From Macrostomum hystrix (lineage: Eukaryota > Animalia > Platyhelminthes): DNA of 64,000 bases. The translations under genes were made by a program, and so were the position numbers. The notes below the pieces were generated by a model that worked only from the letters and a program-made list of their open reading frames with translations, was not told the DNA's origin and did not search any database. Positions 29,344 through 36,255 of the stretch are shown here, piece after piece. The DNA is taken from NCBI GenBank assembly GCA_950097015.1, contig CATNEN010000024.1, positions 6,944,001-7,008,000 on the forward strand, in the 5' to 3' direction. Numbering within the stretch: position 1 is the stretch's first letter; each line of letters opens with the position of its first letter.

Positions 29344-30666
29344 CTAGCCCCGAACACCCAGTGTCTTCTGCATCTCAGTCACCAGCTGCTGGCAGGCGCT
29401 GTCTGGACGCTGGTGAAAAGCGGCCACAATGCCAGCCAGAGCCACCGTGTGCGGCCAGGAGGAGCCGCAGAGCCACAGGCGGCCATTCAGACCAACGGTG
29501 GCCTCGTAGGCTCCCAGCGGAGCAAGCATGGCCAGCAAGCTGCGCCGATTGGCCAGGAGGCGCCGGGCCAGGCCGGGCGGCACCACAACAAGCGTGCCAG
29601 AGTCGCGGCCGACAACGCCCAGACCGTCGGCCCGACCGGCGGAGTCGACGCAGGTTAGTTCAGGCACGAGGCCCGAATCGCAGCGGGTCAGGCGAGCGTA
29701 GACCAGGTCGCCTAGGCGGACATCAGGCCGGTTGCGCTTGGTGGCATTCTCGAAGCTCAGCAGGCTCAGACTGGCCGGCTCCGAGCTGCCGATGTCCACC
29801 TGAGTATTAAGGTGAGAACAGGTGTAAAGAAATGAGAATGAGACAGGTGTTAAGGTGTGCAGGAAAATAGAAAATAGTTTATATTTGCAGGAGGGCTGCG
29901 GGCACTGCTCATTATATTGTAGACTCTCAGCCAGCGAGGAGGCAAAGCGAATCGAAAGTTATATCTAATTACAGAAGCTGTTTATCTGCACAAGGGGGTC
30001 AGTGGCAGAGCGGTCCAATGCGTTTGCTTCTCGCACCAAAGTCCTTGAGCTCAATTCCGCAGCGAGACCACATTAATTTAGGGCGCCGCCGCGGAGAGAA
30101 GGCTTGGGGGCTTGTCGTGCAATTTACGCCCTTGAGGGCAGATGTACACACTTGTGTGAGAGTGTGCCTGCGTACAGTATCTGTGCGCGTGTGTGCTCAG
30201 CACCTCGCTGGCTGCGGGTCTAGTGCCACCAACTGATGTGCTAGTGTTTCACCTGCAGATATATATACTTTTTTACCTGCACAAAGTCGCCCATGGCCCG
30301 GCGCGCCACCACGCCAAGCACGCAGTCGCCGCGGGCCGGCTGATACCTGCCGCAGGGATAATCCAGCCAGTAGCTGCGGCCTCTGTGACGCAGGTAGCCC
30401 AGCCGGTTGGCGCGCACCTCCAGCCTGGCAGCGTTGTCAGCGTCAACACTGAATGCTTGCAGGCCGACGCCGAGGATACAGCTGAGGTTGCCGGCCGGCT
30501 CTGTGAAGGCCAGATCGCCGGGCAGCAGGAGACGCTCGGCTGCCGCGTTGTCCTGGTCGTCTTCGTCAAGTTCTTCGCCCTCCTCCATTGACGCCTCGCC
30601 GAAGTCTTCACCGTCGTCGCATTGTGGTAAATTAGATTTAGAGGTTTTGACCTGTTCAGTTTCCAT
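29344..30666 (-). CDS. EXOSC3: Exosome complex component Rrp40. Exons 30666-30277, 29799-29344.
   Basis: RYQPARGDCVLGVV, VDIGSSEPASLSLLSFENATKRNRPDVRLGDLVYARL, YEATVGLNGRLW; phase-0 intron. Confidence 0.95.
29994..30240 (+). mobile_element. SINE family A in the EXOSC3 intron
   Basis: Head GGGGTCAGTGGCAGAGCGG and body match the copy at 4040. Confidence 0.85.
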
Positions 30667-31511
30667 GGCAACCAAGATAGGCGCGGCCGATTGCTAGAGT
30701 TGTCCGAAATTTCTGGAATTAGAAGTGCTCCATAAAGTGCTCTTTGTATCGTCTATCTATCAATCTATCTATTTATCTACCTACGTATCTATCTATGCAC
30801 CCATCTAATTATTTCTCTACCTATCTGTTGCTATAAATATAGATATAGACACACATGTACAAATAGCGAATATTGAGTTTCCAGAAAGTTAGACATTTCT
30901 GACATTTAAAATGACAAATAAACAAATCGACTAATTTAGAAATATATTTTTCTAAGGGCTAAAATCGTGTTTATTGAATTAATTAAGGAATAAAATTCAG
31001 CAAAAATATGATATATAGAAAAATCATGCTTTGGAAAAGATTTCGGGCGCGGGTTAATAATATGAACGTAGTAGAAATACGATCAGGTATTGTTTGTAAA
31101 ATGCTTCTACAGTCTTCATCAGTTGGCACCATTGCAGTCCAATTAAAATATAATCACGAATCACACCTTAAATGGTGAATACTAGAGTGGAAAGCCGGTA
31201 TCAAAAAGCAAAATTACAATACTGTGTTCAAAGGACTGACTGCAATCAACAAATTTTATTTGATTGTATTTGCTAGAGGTATAAGTAAAAGTTAGTGCTA
31301 AAAATAGAAACCAAAATAAAATTAATCATTCACTCTGAGTCATCGCTAATGCACTCAGTAGGAGTCATACACCGATGACCATCAGCGTGCGTCATTCCCT
31401 ATAAATCTCAGAGTAAGTCATTTACTATGACTCCGAGAGTGAGTATTTCCCAATGACCACTAGAGTGAGTATTTCCCAATTCCGCAGCTGCGATGAGGAA
31501 GCAGTGGCATG

Positions 31512-33207
31512 CTAGTGCGGCTCGCAGCACACGAGGCCGCCGGCTGCTGTCAGCTCAAACTTGCGCAGCTCATCGGCGGCGAAGACCGGCAGTCGGCCGG
31601 CGGCAGCCTTGCGAGCTTCGTCCAGCAGCTGTTGAACCCCGGCCGAGTCCAGCAGCGGACTGAAATGTGTCAGCACTAGGCTTCGGGCGCCAACGCGTAG
31701 GGCAAATTCAACAGCCATGGCCGGAGTGGAATGCCCGCTGGCTACGCAGGACTCGCGCCGCGCATCGCAGACTGTGGCCTCGTGGACCAGGCAGTCGACG
31801 CCGCGGCAGAGCGCCTCGGCCTGGCTTGAGTCGCAGGTATCACCCAGTACGGCCAAACTGGGCCGCCGCCACTGCTCTTCGTCATTCCCATCGACGTCGG
31901 CTACGTCAGGCGGCAGGATTCTATAGCCAACGCAGGGAATGCGATGGCACAGTGCGGCTGCGGTCAGACGATCGCTGACTCGCCAGTTGCCTCCGGGTTC
32001 GGGCGGAGAGCGTAGGATCTGGAATGGGTGGGAGAAAGGAAATTAAGGAGAAAAACAAACCAAGGATCAGTGGGCCTGAAGTGTAGGAGAACCAACCTGA
32101 GGGTCTGAAGTGTAGGAGGAGAACCAACCTGAGGGTCTGAAGTGTAGGAGAACCAACCTAATGGGTCTGAAGTGTAGGAGAACCAACCTGAGGGTCTGAA
32201 GTGTAGGAGAACCAACCTGAGGGTCTGAAGTGTAGGAGAACCAACCTGAGGGTCTGAAGTGTAGGAGGAGAACCAACCTGAGGGTCTGAAGTGTAGGAGA
32301 ACCAACCTGAGGGTCTGAAGTGTAGGAGGAGAACCAACCTGAGGGTCTGAAGTGTAGGAGGAGAACCAACCTGAGGGTCTGAAGTGTAGGAGAACCAACC
32401 TAATGGGTCTGAAGTGTAGGAGAACCAACCAGAGGGTCTGAAGTGTAGGAGAACCAACCTGAGGGTCTGAAGTGTAGGAGAACCAACCTGAGGGTCTGAA
32501 GTGTAGGAGAACCAACCTGATGGGTCTAAATTGTAGGAGAACCAACTTAATGGGTCTGAAGTGTAGGAGAACCAACCTAATGGGTCTGAAGTGTAGGAGA
32601 ACCAACTTGAGGGTCTGAAGTGTAGGAGAACCAACCTGAGGGTCTGAAGTGTAGGAGAACCAACCTCAGGGTCTGAAGTGTAGGAGAACCAACCTGAGGG
32701 TCTGAAGTGTAGGAGAAGTACAATACTAACAGGTTCGACCACGTCCTCATACGGCAATCTTGGAAACTCCGGCGCCCGCTCAATGGTGGCCTCCAGCTCG
32801 GCGGCTGCCTCCGTCGATGCCGGCATCAGTGCGGGCACGCCGGCCAGTTCCTGCAGTCGCAGCCGGACGCCGTTGCGAGCGTCGCTCCTGGCCAAGGCCA
32901 GGCTGTTCCGCACCATCTGGCGGATGCCAGACGGGCCGACCACCTCGAGAACGCTCCCAGGCGCGGCACGGCCAGCCACGGTGCTGAGCAGGCCAGGCAG
33001 GCCGTAGGTGTGGTCGCCGTGCAGGTGTGTGACGGCCACCCGGCTCACCCGGCGCCTGTCCAATCCGGAGCGGGCCAGCTGAACCTGGGCGGATTCGCCG
33101 CAGTCTATCAGCCAGATATCGTTGTCGGCATGAAATCGGACGGCTAGACAGGACGTGTGTCGGTGCGGCGCCGGAAATGACGAGCCGCTGCCAAGGAAGA
33201 CCAGCTC
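31512..33207 (-). CDS. ELAC1: Short-form RNase Z (ELAC1/ElaC-like metallo-beta-lactamase). Exons 33207-32731, 32018-31512; initiator Met not found nearby in the genome.
   Basis: ELVFLGSGSSFP, WLIDCGE, THLHGDH, LCHRIPCVGY, VLGDT, HEAT, GHST, LTHFS. Confidence 0.88.
32075..32717 (+). repeat. Intronic ~29-nt repeat GAACCAACCTGAGGGTCTGAAGTGTAGGA, about 22 copies
   Basis: Visible; fills almost the whole RNase Z intron. Confidence 0.95.
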
Positions 33208-33860
33208 CTGCAGGTTGTGGGTTCGTGTCGCGATTCGGCTGTTATCTTGCGAATTTTTCAAGTTTTTCACTTCTTGCAAGAAAATATTGACAGTTTTACT
33301 ATAAGTAGTGTAAATAAAAAATTATTTTAATCTTGTTTAAGGTTCAAAAATGTTCAAAGGAAAGCTTAAATTTTGTTCTCTCGAAGTTAACAGCCACTAT
33401 TAGTTTTAACGGATGCTTTACTATAAATCGATGCTTCATTATTTTCATTTTCTGAGACCAGACACTTGTTTTATAAGCAACAGAAAGTAAAATAATGCAA
33501 AGCAAAAGGAATCAAAATCATAATTCTCCAATCAATCAATAATGTACACAAACTTCTTGGATCAAAGATCAAAGACAAAGACTTTATATTTTTAACGACA
33601 ATTTTTAAAGCTACATTTTTAGCATCGTCAACTCCAAGTCAAGCACGATCAAAGATATTCTGACCACAAAATGAATTGAAATGCATAGCAACAAAAGTAC
33701 AGTAACAAAAGTACGAGTACTTTTTTCCCGTTAGTGTAATTCAGTTACAGTTACAAAGTAACTGTCAGGTAACTGTCAGGTTAGTAGCGAATAGCAACGA
33801 TAAGAATCCCAGCCTTTTAATCCGTTTAATTTTTCGTGCTAAAGAAGACAGTCAGCGTCT

Positions 33861-36255
33861 CTACTCGTCCACGCCTCGTACGTGTCTATCTCTCTCTGGC
33901 ACAAACGGCTCCCTGGTCGCGCCGCCGCGATGCTCTCTCCTGTTGACCTCCTTCCGCCTCTGCTTGCCCCTGATAGCTTTCATCTCTAGTTGGGCCTGGT
34001 ACAGCCGCTTCGGCAGGTGCCGGTGCTGCACAATGCGCCTAACCATCGGATGATTGGCGAACTTCCGCTTCAAAGCCTCGGCCGTGTTGGCAGCAGCCCG
34101 CTCTCTGGGTGTCACGGCGCCCAGTTTCTCAGATGCGCGCGCCTTCCATAGGCGCAAATTGAAATCGGCGCTGGCTGTTACAATGAAACGCGAGTCAAGG
34201 CTATAGCGAGCGGCGAATGCGCGGTACATGCGCTTAGTGTGGTAGACGTCGCGAGATTGGCTGCGGCCCGACTGCCACAGGCGCACTGTGCAGTCGTAGC
34301 TAGCTGAGACTAACTCCCGGCCAGTTGGGGAATAGTCCACATCCATGGCCGCGTTGGTGTGGCCGCGATAAACGCAGGCCGGCGAGGTCAGATGGCGAGC
34401 GTCCCAGGCGTACAGATTGTAATCGTCTGACGCTGTGGCTAGCACGAAAGGCTCCTGGAAGCGGAGGAATTTGGAGAAAATAAGGAGGGATAGAGCTGGG
34501 ACTCAAATGGATGGTATAATTTATCCTTTTTGGGATCGAAGCTGGTGCTTTTGAAGATAATTTTTTATCAAACTGGATTCTAATAAGGCAATTTTTAAAA
34601 AAGGAGGGTTTTGGTAGGAAGTAGAAATGGTATTTTCACTTTAGCTGGGACTGTTGAGGAGATTGGGACAGGAACTGGGACTGTTGAGGAGATTGGGACA
34701 GGAACTGGGACTGTTGAGGAGATTGGGACAGGAACTGGGACTGTTGAGGAGATTGGGACAGGAACTGGGACTGTTGAGGAGATTGGGACAGGAACTGGGA
34801 CTGTTGAGGAGATTGGGACAGGAACTGGGACTGTTGAGGAGATTGGGACAGGAACTGGGACTGTTGAGGAGATTGGGACAGGAACTGGGACTGTTGAGAA
34901 GATTGGGACAGGAACTGGGACTGTTGAATGGCAAATACTTCAGAGGTGAGTCTCAGTTACCTGAGGATTCCAACAGACGGCATTCTGCCGAAACTCGCAT
35001 CTCACTCGGCGCAATGGCTCCCTCTGCCTGCTGTCAATTAGCAGTAGGGCGTTGTCCTTAGTTACGGCCGCCAACAGGTGCCACTCGGTGGGATTGAAGC
35101 GCGCCTGCAGCACGGAGTCCGAGCCCCAGCGCCACTGACCAACAGGGTCGGAGCGGCGGCTGTCGTACAAGTAGACTGCGTCGCCAGACAGAGCGAACAG
35201 ATCCTTGCTGACGTGATGGTCCAGATTTAGCGGCGCAAAGTCTAGCAGGCGCTGGCTAACCGGCCGACTAAATTCTGCCAGATCGTCGGCAACGCGCCAG
35301 GCTTTCAGGGTGCGATCAGTGTCGCAGCAGGAGTAGAACAGGTCCTGCTCCGGATGCCAGCAGAGACCCTGGCGAGCGATATTGTGGCGAATAAGACTGT
35401 AGTAAGCTTGAGAACTTAGGCACTGCTGACTGGCTATGCTGGATGTTAAAGCAAACATCTTTATCTAACACTAAGGTCAGGGTTCGATTCCCGACTCAAC
35501 TGGAACAATTTTGCCACTTCAGTAATAAGATTAACTAAACTTAGCTTTGATTAAGTTCAACCAGCTGTTAAATGGGTACCAGCATTAGCTGTGATAATTT
35601 AGGTTGGGTGTGGCATTCCCAGTCTATGGACTGAACAGCCGTACGCAGCCTTCAGATGCGCCGCGCAATAGCTGCTGTCGGCTGCACATCTGGACCCAAC
35701 TAGGGCAGGTGTAATCAAATATTGTTTATTTATTTTTGCATTAGACACATATCAGATGGTGTTAGACACGGATGTTAGATGAAGGCGTAAGACACGGATG
35801 TTAGACATGGATGTTAGATGAAGATGTTTGGACATGAATGTTAGATGAAGGTGTTAGATACGGATGTCAGCAGCCTTGTAAGACGCGTTGGTTAGTTACC
35901 AAAGGCAAACATGTACCTGAACACATCCGGAGTGGGCCTCTAGTTGCAGTACGCGACTCCGCTTCGGGATGTTCCAAAAAGCGACGCGACCATCGACGCA
36001 TCCGCTTAGGCAGAGGCTTAGCGCCCGCGGATGCATGCAGATTCGGCTGAGCTGGTCACCCTGATCACCGAAGCAGCCTAGGAAGGGCTTGGCAAACACT
36101 CGCTCCAGCTTGGCGGCATTCAGGGCGCGAATGTACTCAGTCTCGGCTGACATTGGATGGAGTTCTGGCGCCGGATTGCGGGCAACCTTGTAAATGTCGT
36201 CCGCTGTCTCGCGCTGATAATCCAGTGGATTTCGCAACAACAGCTTCACCTTCAT
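33861..36255 (-). CDS. DCAF13: DDB1- and CUL4-associated factor 13 / Sof1 (SSU processome WD40 protein). Exons 36255-35917, 35368-34961, 34454-33861.
   Basis: YIRALNAAKLERVFAKPF, RFNPTE, CWNPQ|EPFVLATASDD, YHTKRM, C-terminal Sof1 region with HRHLPK. Confidence 0.96.
34645..34927 (+). repeat. Intronic 30-nt repeat GATTGGGACAGGAACTGGGACTGTTGAGGA, about 9 copies
   Basis: Visible, nearly perfect copies. Confidence 0.95.
35470..35720 (+). mobile_element. SINE family B (CORE-like), in DCAF13 intron 1
   Basis: B-box GGTTCGATTCC, CAGCTGTTAAATGGGTACC, TGGACTGAACAGCCGTACGCAGCC shared with the copy at 42450. Confidence 0.8.

What the first reader, a model, noticed from the sequence alone, without database searches (positions are those of the whole stretch)
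33190..33330. RNase Z has no local genomic start codon; the spliced-leader AUG could supply it
Seen: the upstream frame has no ATG and is closed by TAA near 33322; a CTGCAG acceptor falls exactly before GAG CTG GTC TTC CTT (ELVFL). Established: bacterial RNase Z proteins begin M-E-L-x-F-L-G; flatworm spliced leaders end in AUG that can serve as initiator (shown in Schistosoma). Inference: SL-AUG joined at 33207 yields the canonical N-terminus MELVFLG, making translation dependent on trans-splicing.
Basis: partly seen in the sequence, partly recalled or inferred. Interest (0 to 1): 0.7.

Follow-up and report, generated by a model that had tools for sequence, protein, structure and literature searches.

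The report
Spliced leader supplies RNase Z start codon
In the flatworm Macrostomum hystrix an RNase Z (ELAC1-like) gene has no start codon of its own, and RNA assemblies show the AUG-ending spliced leader joined exactly in front of its second codon; this is a confirmed new example of a mechanism known in flatworms since 2006.

Summary
On the minus strand an AG acceptor (33209-33208) sits directly before GAG CTG GTC TTC CTT (exon 1 from 33207). The upstream frame is closed by TAA (33324-33322) without any ATG. The first in-frame Met downstream lies after the catalytic HxHxDH motif.

Spliced RNA contigs from three samples of one study carry ...TTTATTGCATG joined at 33207, which reads AUG GAG CUG = MELVFLG. 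That leader is the genome's own SL RNA exon...GCATG|GTAAG, present in 28 copies. It is identical to the published M. lignano SL (PMC5173321).

The same layout, AG immediately before codon 2, is found at three other loci: a second near-identical copy, a 54%-identical paralog, and both M. lignano orthologs. Both ortholog models begin without Met; GenBank calls one 'partial'.

Exon 1 is under purifying selection (dN/dS 0.14). Translation from the SL AUG itself remains inferred.

The mechanism is known (Cheng et al. 2006). This scan has already confirmed it for several other genes of this genome, so this is a new member of a known kind.

Two side points. The window gene is an RNase Z paralog that has lost the tRNA-binding flexible arm. 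A minor upstream acceptor would give a dead AUG-AAG-UGA reading frame.

The parts
33208..33209 (-). AG acceptor used for spliced-leader trans-splicing (productive site); the exon begins at 33207
   Evidence: contigs of X2, X3 and X4 end at 33208 with loose letters that are the reverse complement of ...TGCGAAGACTCAATTTATTGCAT. The SL's last G coincides with the genomic G at 33208. Sequence read.
32731..33207 (-). Exon 1, 159 codons (ELVFLG...EDVVEP), phase 0, with no ATG of its own. It holds the metallo-beta-lactamase motif HLHGDH.
   Evidence: contigs lie on 32731-33208 with 0 differences. Lactamase_B and Lactamase_B_2. TIGR02651 RNase_Z, 1.2e-33, model positions 1-107; human ELAC1 5e-23, B. 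subtilis RNase Z 1.4e-22.
32019..32730 (-). Only intron (GTTAGT...CCAG), filled with a ~30-nt tandem repeat
   Evidence: the loose end at 32731 equals the start of exon 2 (ATCCTACGCTC..., window 32018 downwards). One search gives the sequence.
31512..32018 (-). Exon 2 coding part, 168 codons plus TAG (31514-31512). It holds motif III His, GDT, HEAT, HST and motif V His. The flexible arm is reduced to about 15 residues.
   Evidence: (TIGR02651 2.7e-17, model positions 201-287).
33322..33324 (-). In-frame TAA that closes the upstream reading frame
33273..33274 (-). Minor alternative SL acceptor (tttcttgcaag|aagtga). The SL AUG would then read AUG AAG UGA, out of frame with the enzyme.
   Evidence: run X4 record 12: 72 nt with 15 loose letters equal to the SL segment ACTGCGAAGACTCAA. 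The next 11 SL letters lie on 33283-33273 with 2 mismatches. The third mismatch fits the C6 copy. This reconstruction is my inference from the table, not a printed contig.
33210..33741 (-). AT-rich outron / intergenic stretch between the Sof1-like gene's transcript end and the acceptor. It has no in-frame ATG.
   Evidence: (upstream-gene contigs end at 33741 in X2 and X3, and reach 33571 in X4).

Best explanation
This is a two-exon ELAC1/RNase Z-family gene of Macrostomum hystrix on the minus strand: exon 1 at 33207-32731 and exon 2 at 32018-31512. The genome encodes the protein only from its second codon. The pre-mRNA is trans-spliced at the AG at 33209-33208 to the 44-nt spliced leader, whose last three bases are AUG. 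The mature mRNA therefore starts with a 41-nt leader followed by AUG GAG CUG GUC UUC CUU GGC, and the SL AUG is the only AUG ahead of the reading frame. Translation of the 328-residue enzyme (Met + 159 + 168) thus depends on trans-splicing at this exact site. Shown here: the SL gene, the RNA join, the frame, the lack of any genomic in-frame ATG, and conservation of the layout. Inferred: that ribosomes initiate at the SL AUG, as demonstrated for Schistosoma by Cheng et al. 2006.
For: RNA join: three samples. The contigs also cross the gene's intron, so they are RNA.

SL identity: searches found 28 exact genomic copies. The tandem-array copies read ...GCATG|GTAAG and are followed by a U-rich Sm-like site and hairpins (z = -4.35). 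The same SL is printed for M. lignano in PMC5173321. The SL contains no other ATG.

No genomic start.

N-terminus: E1 aligns to residue 2 or model position 1 of RNase Z.

Conservation of 'AG then codon 2':
- The C6 copy is 97.8% identical.
- In the C2 paralog...cttacag|GACCTAATCTTCCTGGGC has its upstream frame closed by TAG with no ATG.
- In the M. lignano ortholog P0001 (L012)...ttcaag|GATCTCGTATTC has an in-frame TGA two codons upstream.
- In the M. lignano ortholog of the paralog, P0121 (L014), the join is ...cctgcag|GACCTGATC.
- Both M. lignano protein models start with D, not M. GenBank names P0001 'partial'.

Functional gene: exon 1 against M. lignano gives dN 0.128, dS 0.925, dN/dS 0.14, while the upstream DNA is unalignable. 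All catalytic motifs are kept. The AlphaFold model of P0001 has pLDDT 85 and its best PDB match is human ELAC1, 3zwf.

Mechanism known: PMC9851317 and PMC12582326 cite Cheng et al. 2006. PMC10468722 notes that the Macrostomum SL likely contains the final ATG start codon.
Against: There is no direct evidence of translation initiation (no Ribo-seq, no N-terminal peptide). The RNA evidence consists of assembled contigs from a single study; the runs are not labelled as RNA on record, and their RNA nature is inferred from the spliced intron. In run X4 some short contigs run unspliced through 33207 (records 10 and 11), and one shows the SL at an upstream acceptor that puts the AUG out of frame, so not every transcript is productive. 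The productive acceptor has a weak polypyrimidine tract. In the M. lignano ortholog of the paralog, an in-frame genomic ATG lies 21 codons upstream inside a tandem repeat, so strict dependence is not demonstrated for every family member.
Confidence: 0.88

Rival explanations
1. A cis-spliced upstream micro-exon supplies the ATG, and the SL join is a minor or artefactual form.
For: The productive acceptor is an ordinary AG that could also serve cis-splicing. PMC12582326 reports extensive sharing of acceptors between cis- and trans-splicing in flatworms.
Against: One search reports no joint anywhere in 33208-34500 in four runs. The longest contigs of three samples carry the SL directly at 33207. 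No contig covers 33284-33570. Four homologous loci keep AG then codon 2 while their upstream sequence is unrelated.
Confidence: 0.03
2. The protein starts at a non-AUG codon on transcripts that keep the upstream sequence, such as the in-frame CUG at 33213-33211 or the UUG at 33279. SL addition would then be only 5'-end processing.
For: X4 records 10 and 11 run through the acceptor. The alternative SL site at 33272 produces mRNAs that contain these codons. The frame is open from 33321.
Against: In M. lignano an in-frame TGA lies two codons before the acceptor, so no N-terminal extension is possible there. The upstream sequence is not conserved. In the alternative form the SL AUG opens a two-codon ORF ahead of these codons. 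The dominant contigs are joined at 33207.
Confidence: 0.04
3. The locus is a 5'-truncated pseudogene, or the SL-exon join is an assembly chimera.
For: There is no ATG. The GenBank ortholog is labelled 'partial'. SL k-mers are shared by thousands of mRNAs.
Against: dN/dS is 0.14 at dS 0.93. All catalytic motifs are intact and the predicted fold is confident. The transcripts are correctly spliced. The same join appears in three separately assembled samples with 21-23 SL letters, as expected where a k=31 graph stops at the shared part of the leader.
Confidence: 0.02

Closest known systems
[quoted passage not shown]
   Same: The SL ends in AUG and is joined in frame directly before the first genome-encoded codon of a conserved protein. 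The gene has no usable ATG of its own. According to PMC9851317, more than 40 S. mansoni cDNAs were reported to need the SL AUG.
   Different: The organism is a free-living macrostomorph, not a parasite, and the gene family is different (ELAC1/RNase Z). Here only the RNA join is shown, not translation. The layout is shown here to be conserved across two paralogs and two species.
slORFs (ORFs created by SL-supplied start codons; slORFfinder, PMC9851317)
   Same: By definition this gene's ORF is an slORF: its start codon comes from the leader.
   Different: slORFfinder calls rest on ribosome footprints; none are available here. In this case the slORF is the main conserved protein, not an alternative ORF.
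Other SL-AUG-dependent genes noted by this scan in the same genome (CHMP6, NDUFA5, POP5, SFMBT, PPP2R3C, DPH7)
   Same: Same genome, same SL, same 'AG then codon 2' layout, and the same kind of RNA-contig evidence according to those notes.
   Different: I did not re-test those cases. The present case adds conservation across an old paralog pair and a non-productive alternative acceptor.
Short-form RNase Z / ELAC1 (human ELAC1 3zwf; B. subtilis RNase Z 1y44; NCBIfam TIGR02651)
   Same: It has the metallo-beta-lactamase fold, the HxHxDH motif, motif III-V residues, and the HEAT and HST motifs. Its N-terminus begins at the homologous position. The best fold match is human ELAC1.
   Different: The window gene and its M. 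lignano ortholog have only about 15 and 7 residues where RNase Z has the ~50-residue flexible arm (exosite) that holds the tRNA. The paralog on contig C2 keeps the arm.

Membership tests
SL-AUG-initiated flatworm genes (Cheng et al. 2006 type) | The organism's spliced leader ends in AUG immediately before the GU donor | tested here: met
   the SL RNA genes read ...TTTATTGCATG|GTAAG; the same SL is published for M. lignano. SL-RNA-like fold.
SL-AUG-initiated flatworm genes (Cheng et al. 2006 type) | The SL is trans-spliced to this mRNA at a site that puts its AUG in frame with the conserved ORF | tested here: met
   X2, X3 and X4 contigs join the SL at 33207, giving AUG GAG CUG GUC = MELV.
SL-AUG-initiated flatworm genes (Cheng et al. 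2006 type) | No genomic in-frame AUG that could start a functional protein | tested here: met
   TAA at 33324-33322, no in-frame ATG up to 33741, and the first internal Met lies after HxHxDH.
SL-AUG-initiated flatworm genes (Cheng et al. 2006 type) | Ribosomes actually initiate at the SL AUG | not testable with these tools
   This needs Ribo-seq, N-terminal proteomics or a reporter assay.
RNase Z short form / ELAC1 (TIGR02651) | Metallo-beta-lactamase fold with HxHxDH and motif III-V metal ligands, plus HEAT and HST motifs | tested here: met
   (columns H61-H66, H184, D205, H224, H241 and H263 of P0001 are kept). (best fold match 3zwf).
RNase Z short form / ELAC1 (TIGR02651) | Flexible arm (exosite) of about 50 residues between motif III and motif IV | tested here: not met
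   query residues 38-53 stand against E. coli residues 155-206; alignment columns 252-306 are empty in the window gene and P0001. The arm is present in the C2 paralog.
RNase Z short form / ELAC1 (TIGR02651) | Whole-protein score above the curated equivalog cut-off (292.95 bits) | tested here: inconclusive
   The exons were searched apart, as required: 116.5 and 62.8 bits. The joined protein was not searched.
RNase Z short form / ELAC1 (TIGR02651) | Endonucleolytic 3' processing of pre-tRNA | not testable with these tools
   This needs an enzyme assay.

The most novel reading that the evidence does not exclude
Obligate SL-AUG initiation was fixed in the ELAC1 family before the duplication that produced the arm-bearing and arm-less paralogs, and has been kept in both since. 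Choice between the productive acceptor (33207) and the upstream acceptor (33272, which gives AUG-AAG-UGA) would then act as a splice-level on/off switch for an arm-less RNase Z that has moved to a substrate other than pre-tRNA.
Probability: 0.1. Interest if true: 0.55.

Novelty: new member of a known kind. Interest (0 to 1): 0.3.

Why it matters
The case shows, with RNA evidence, that a conserved RNA-processing enzyme of a free-living flatworm can only be made after trans-splicing. It also shows that this layout has survived gene duplication and speciation. In practice it explains why database models of this gene start without Met or are flagged 'partial', and it argues that Macrostomum annotation pipelines should add the SL AUG. 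It does not change what is known about the mechanism, which was established in Schistosoma in 2006 and has been found repeatedly in this genome by this scan.

Tried and rejected
- Cheng et al. 2006 could not be read (not held), so it is cited only through PMC9851317 and PMC12582326.
- The look-up of sequencing runs found no run labelled RNA. The RNA nature of X2-X4 rests on their spliced contigs. The two X1 contigs (32952-33194 and 33843-34073) do not reach the junction and say nothing about it.
- Rfam has no model that matched the SL RNA; only a neighbouring U1 snRNA matched.
Exons were searched apart. For length matching the uninterrupted window frame 32158-33279 was given, with only residues 25-183 (exon 1) scored.
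Its SL dependence is inferred from genomic layout and from the Met-less M. lignano model P0121.
- A bacterial origin or contamination was considered because the first search listed bacterial RNase Z right after Macrostomum. I rejected it for three reasons: the gene has a spliceosomal intron and an SL; the exhaustive search with the paralog finds ELAC1-like proteins beginning MSMD[IV]TFLG at 55-59% identity (their animal origin is my inference, since that library carries no names); and the best fold match is human ELAC1.
- An operon with the Sof1-like gene was considered. The gap is 360-530 nt and no contig bridges it, so this is neither supported nor excluded.

Full report
**Observation.** The feature lies on the minus strand. 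The sequence ...aacctgcag|gagctggtcttccttggc places an AG at 33209-33208, and the first exon base is 33207. In that frame the upstream codons run back to a TAA at 33324-33322 without any ATG, and the mechanical ORF list can only start at a TTG. Between the acceptor and 33741, where the upstream gene's transcript contigs end, there are six ATGs, none in frame. The first in-frame Met downstream is residue 98 of exon 1, beyond H61-x-H63-x-D65-H66, so an internal start would remove the catalytic motif.

**Organism.** The window's assembly has 220,453,370 bases in 42 contigs. That is exactly the figure given for the Macrostomum hystrix assembly by Wiberg et al. 2023 (PMC10468722). Earlier notes of this scan gave the same name.

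**The gene.**
- Exon 1 (33207-32731, 159 codons) and exon 2 (32018-31512, 168 codons plus TAG) are separated by a GT...AG intron full of a ~30-nt tandem repeat.
- Searched apart, the two exons match RNase Z (TIGR02651) at 1.2e-33 and 2.7e-17. They also match Lactamase_B and Lactamase_B_2, and human ELAC1 and bacterial RNase Z structures.
- The joined protein was not built or searched.
- Residue E1 aligns to residue 2 of B. subtilis RNase Z and to model position 1. Many homologs begin MELVFLG, MELIFLG or MELHFLG.

**The spliced leader.**
- An exact search for the leader letters seen in the RNA contigs finds 28 copies in the genome.
- Copies in ~11.6-kb tandem arrays on C15, C17 and C42, and one on C1, read ...TTTATTGCATG followed by GTAAG. 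A U-rich Sm-like site and hairpins follow (fold z = -4.35).
- The 44-nt leader (L006:1501-1544, minus strand) is identical to the M. lignano leader printed in PMC5173321. It contains no ATG other than its last three bases.

**The RNA join.**
- Contigs of runs X2, X3 and X4 (three samples, one study) lie on 32731-33208 with no differences.
- At 32731 they continue with the first letters of exon 2, so they come from spliced RNA.
- At 33208 they continue with 21-23 letters that are the reverse complement of ...TGCGAAGACTCAATTTATTGCAT. The leader's final G coincides with the G of the genomic AG.
- Given the GT donor in the SL gene, the exon-exon junction is ...GCAUG|GAGCUG. The mRNA therefore reads AUG GAG CUG GUC UUC CUU GGC = MELVFLG.
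- No other joint was reported between 32690 and 34500.

**Conservation.**
- A 97.8%-identical copy on C6, possibly a residual haplotig, has the same acceptor. Variants of X4 record 11 (33199, 33218, 33226) match that copy, so it is transcribed too.
- A 54%-identical paralog on C2 has ...cttacag|GACCTAATCTTCCTGGGC (DLIFLG). Its upstream frame is closed by TAG and holds no ATG.
- The M. lignano ortholog of the window gene (P0001, 83% identical, GenBank 'partial') starts with DLVFLG. Its locus reads ...ttcaag|GATCTCGTA, with an in-frame TGA two codons upstream and only an out-of-frame ATG.
- The M. lignano ortholog of the paralog (P0121, 91% identical) starts with DLIFLG after ...cctgcag. That locus does have an in-frame ATG 21 codons upstream, inside a 25-nt tandem repeat.
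- Exon 1 compared with M. lignano gives dN 0.128, dS 0.925 and dN/dS 0.14, while the upstream DNA is unalignable.
- So the position of the acceptor, not the upstream sequence, is what selection has kept.

**Mechanism and what is inferred.** The following are shown:
- the SL gene;
- the in-frame join;
- the absence of a genomic start;
- conservation of the layout.

That ribosomes initiate at the SL AUG is inferred from precedent. Cheng et al. 2006 showed this for S. mansoni and listed more than 40 cDNAs that need the SL AUG, as summarised in PMC9851317 and PMC12582326. Wiberg et al. note that the Macrostomum SL likely contains the final ATG start codon. With no N-terminal extension, the protein has no room for a targeting presequence (inference).

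**Non-productive forms.**
- In X4 two 78-nt contigs run through 33207 unspliced.
- One 72-nt contig begins with the SL segment ACTGCGAAGACTCAA and then lies on 33283-33227 with three mismatches. The next 11 SL letters fit 33283-33273 with two mismatches, and the third mismatch fits the C6 copy.
- I read this as the SL joined at the AG at 33274-33273. That join gives AUG AAG UGA, out of frame with the enzyme. It is a minor form, seen in one run.

**Identity of the enzyme.**
- The window protein and P0001 keep all metal-binding and HEAT/HST motifs. The AlphaFold model of P0001 (pLDDT 85) matches human ELAC1 best.
- Between motif III and motif IV they have only about 15 and 7 residues, where E. 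coli, B. subtilis and human enzymes have about 50: the flexible arm that clamps the tRNA.
- The C2 paralog keeps the arm, including a GE..LLGELKRG segment. It is 55-59% identical to ELAC1-like proteins that begin MSMD[IV]TFLG. That search library carries no names, so their animal origin is my inference.
- Macrostomum therefore has a canonical ELAC1 and an arm-less derivative. The duplication predates the hystrix-lignano split.

**Context.** The gene sits between a Sof1/DCAF13-like WD40 gene (last exon 34445-33861) and RRP40 (about 30675-29344), all on the minus strand. The order is the same in M. lignano. The gap to the upstream transcript end is 360-530 nt and no contig bridges it, so an operon is neither supported nor excluded.

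**Verdict.** The mechanism is already known, and this scan has confirmed it for several other genes of the same genome (I did not re-test those notes). This is a new member of a known kind, of modest interest. The arm-less paralog and the conserved 'AG then codon 2' layout are the only added points.

Noticed in passing
window 31512-33207 (minus); compare L013:1501-4965: The window's RNase Z is an arm-less paralog. About 40 residues of the tRNA-binding flexible arm are missing, in M. lignano too. A second gene on contig C2 keeps the arm. The arm-less form is conserved (dN/dS 0.14) and transcribed, so it may have a substrate other than pre-tRNA.
   Followed up: partly
L006:1429-2000 (G000:C15), and arrays on C15, C17 and C42: SL RNA genes lie in tandem arrays with a period of about 11.6 kb. 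A U1 snRNA gene (Rfam RF00003, 151.7 bits) sits about 300 nt upstream on the same strand.
   Followed up: partly
L002, L003, L004, L005 (G000:C3, C7): These are exact copies of the spliced leader not followed by a GT donor but by unrelated sequence. L003 and L004 share the same continuation. They may be retrocopies of trans-spliced mRNAs or SL pseudogenes.
   Followed up: no
window 33273-33274 (minus): An upstream alternative SL acceptor with a better pyrimidine tract than the productive one. When it is used, the SL AUG opens a two-codon ORF (AUG AAG UGA). Seen in one run only.
   Followed up: partly
window 29344-34445 (minus); L012: Three RNA-processing genes lie in a row on one strand: Sof1/DCAF13-like, RNase Z, and exosome RRP40. 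The order is the same in M. lignano.
   Followed up: partly
window 32030-32720; window 34611-34950; L011:1880-2500; L013:4000-4460; L014:1260-1480: Introns and upstream regions of these genes are filled with short tandem repeats (about 30-nt units, a 21-nt unit, (CTGC)n, a 25-nt unit). Several stay open in one reading frame and create long spurious ORFs.
   Followed up: no
L010 (G000:C6:39741-40217): A second copy of the gene, 97.8% identical including non-coding DNA, lies near the start of contig C6. It may be a residual haplotig of the kind Wiberg et al. describe. Its variants appear in RNA contigs.
   Followed up: partly
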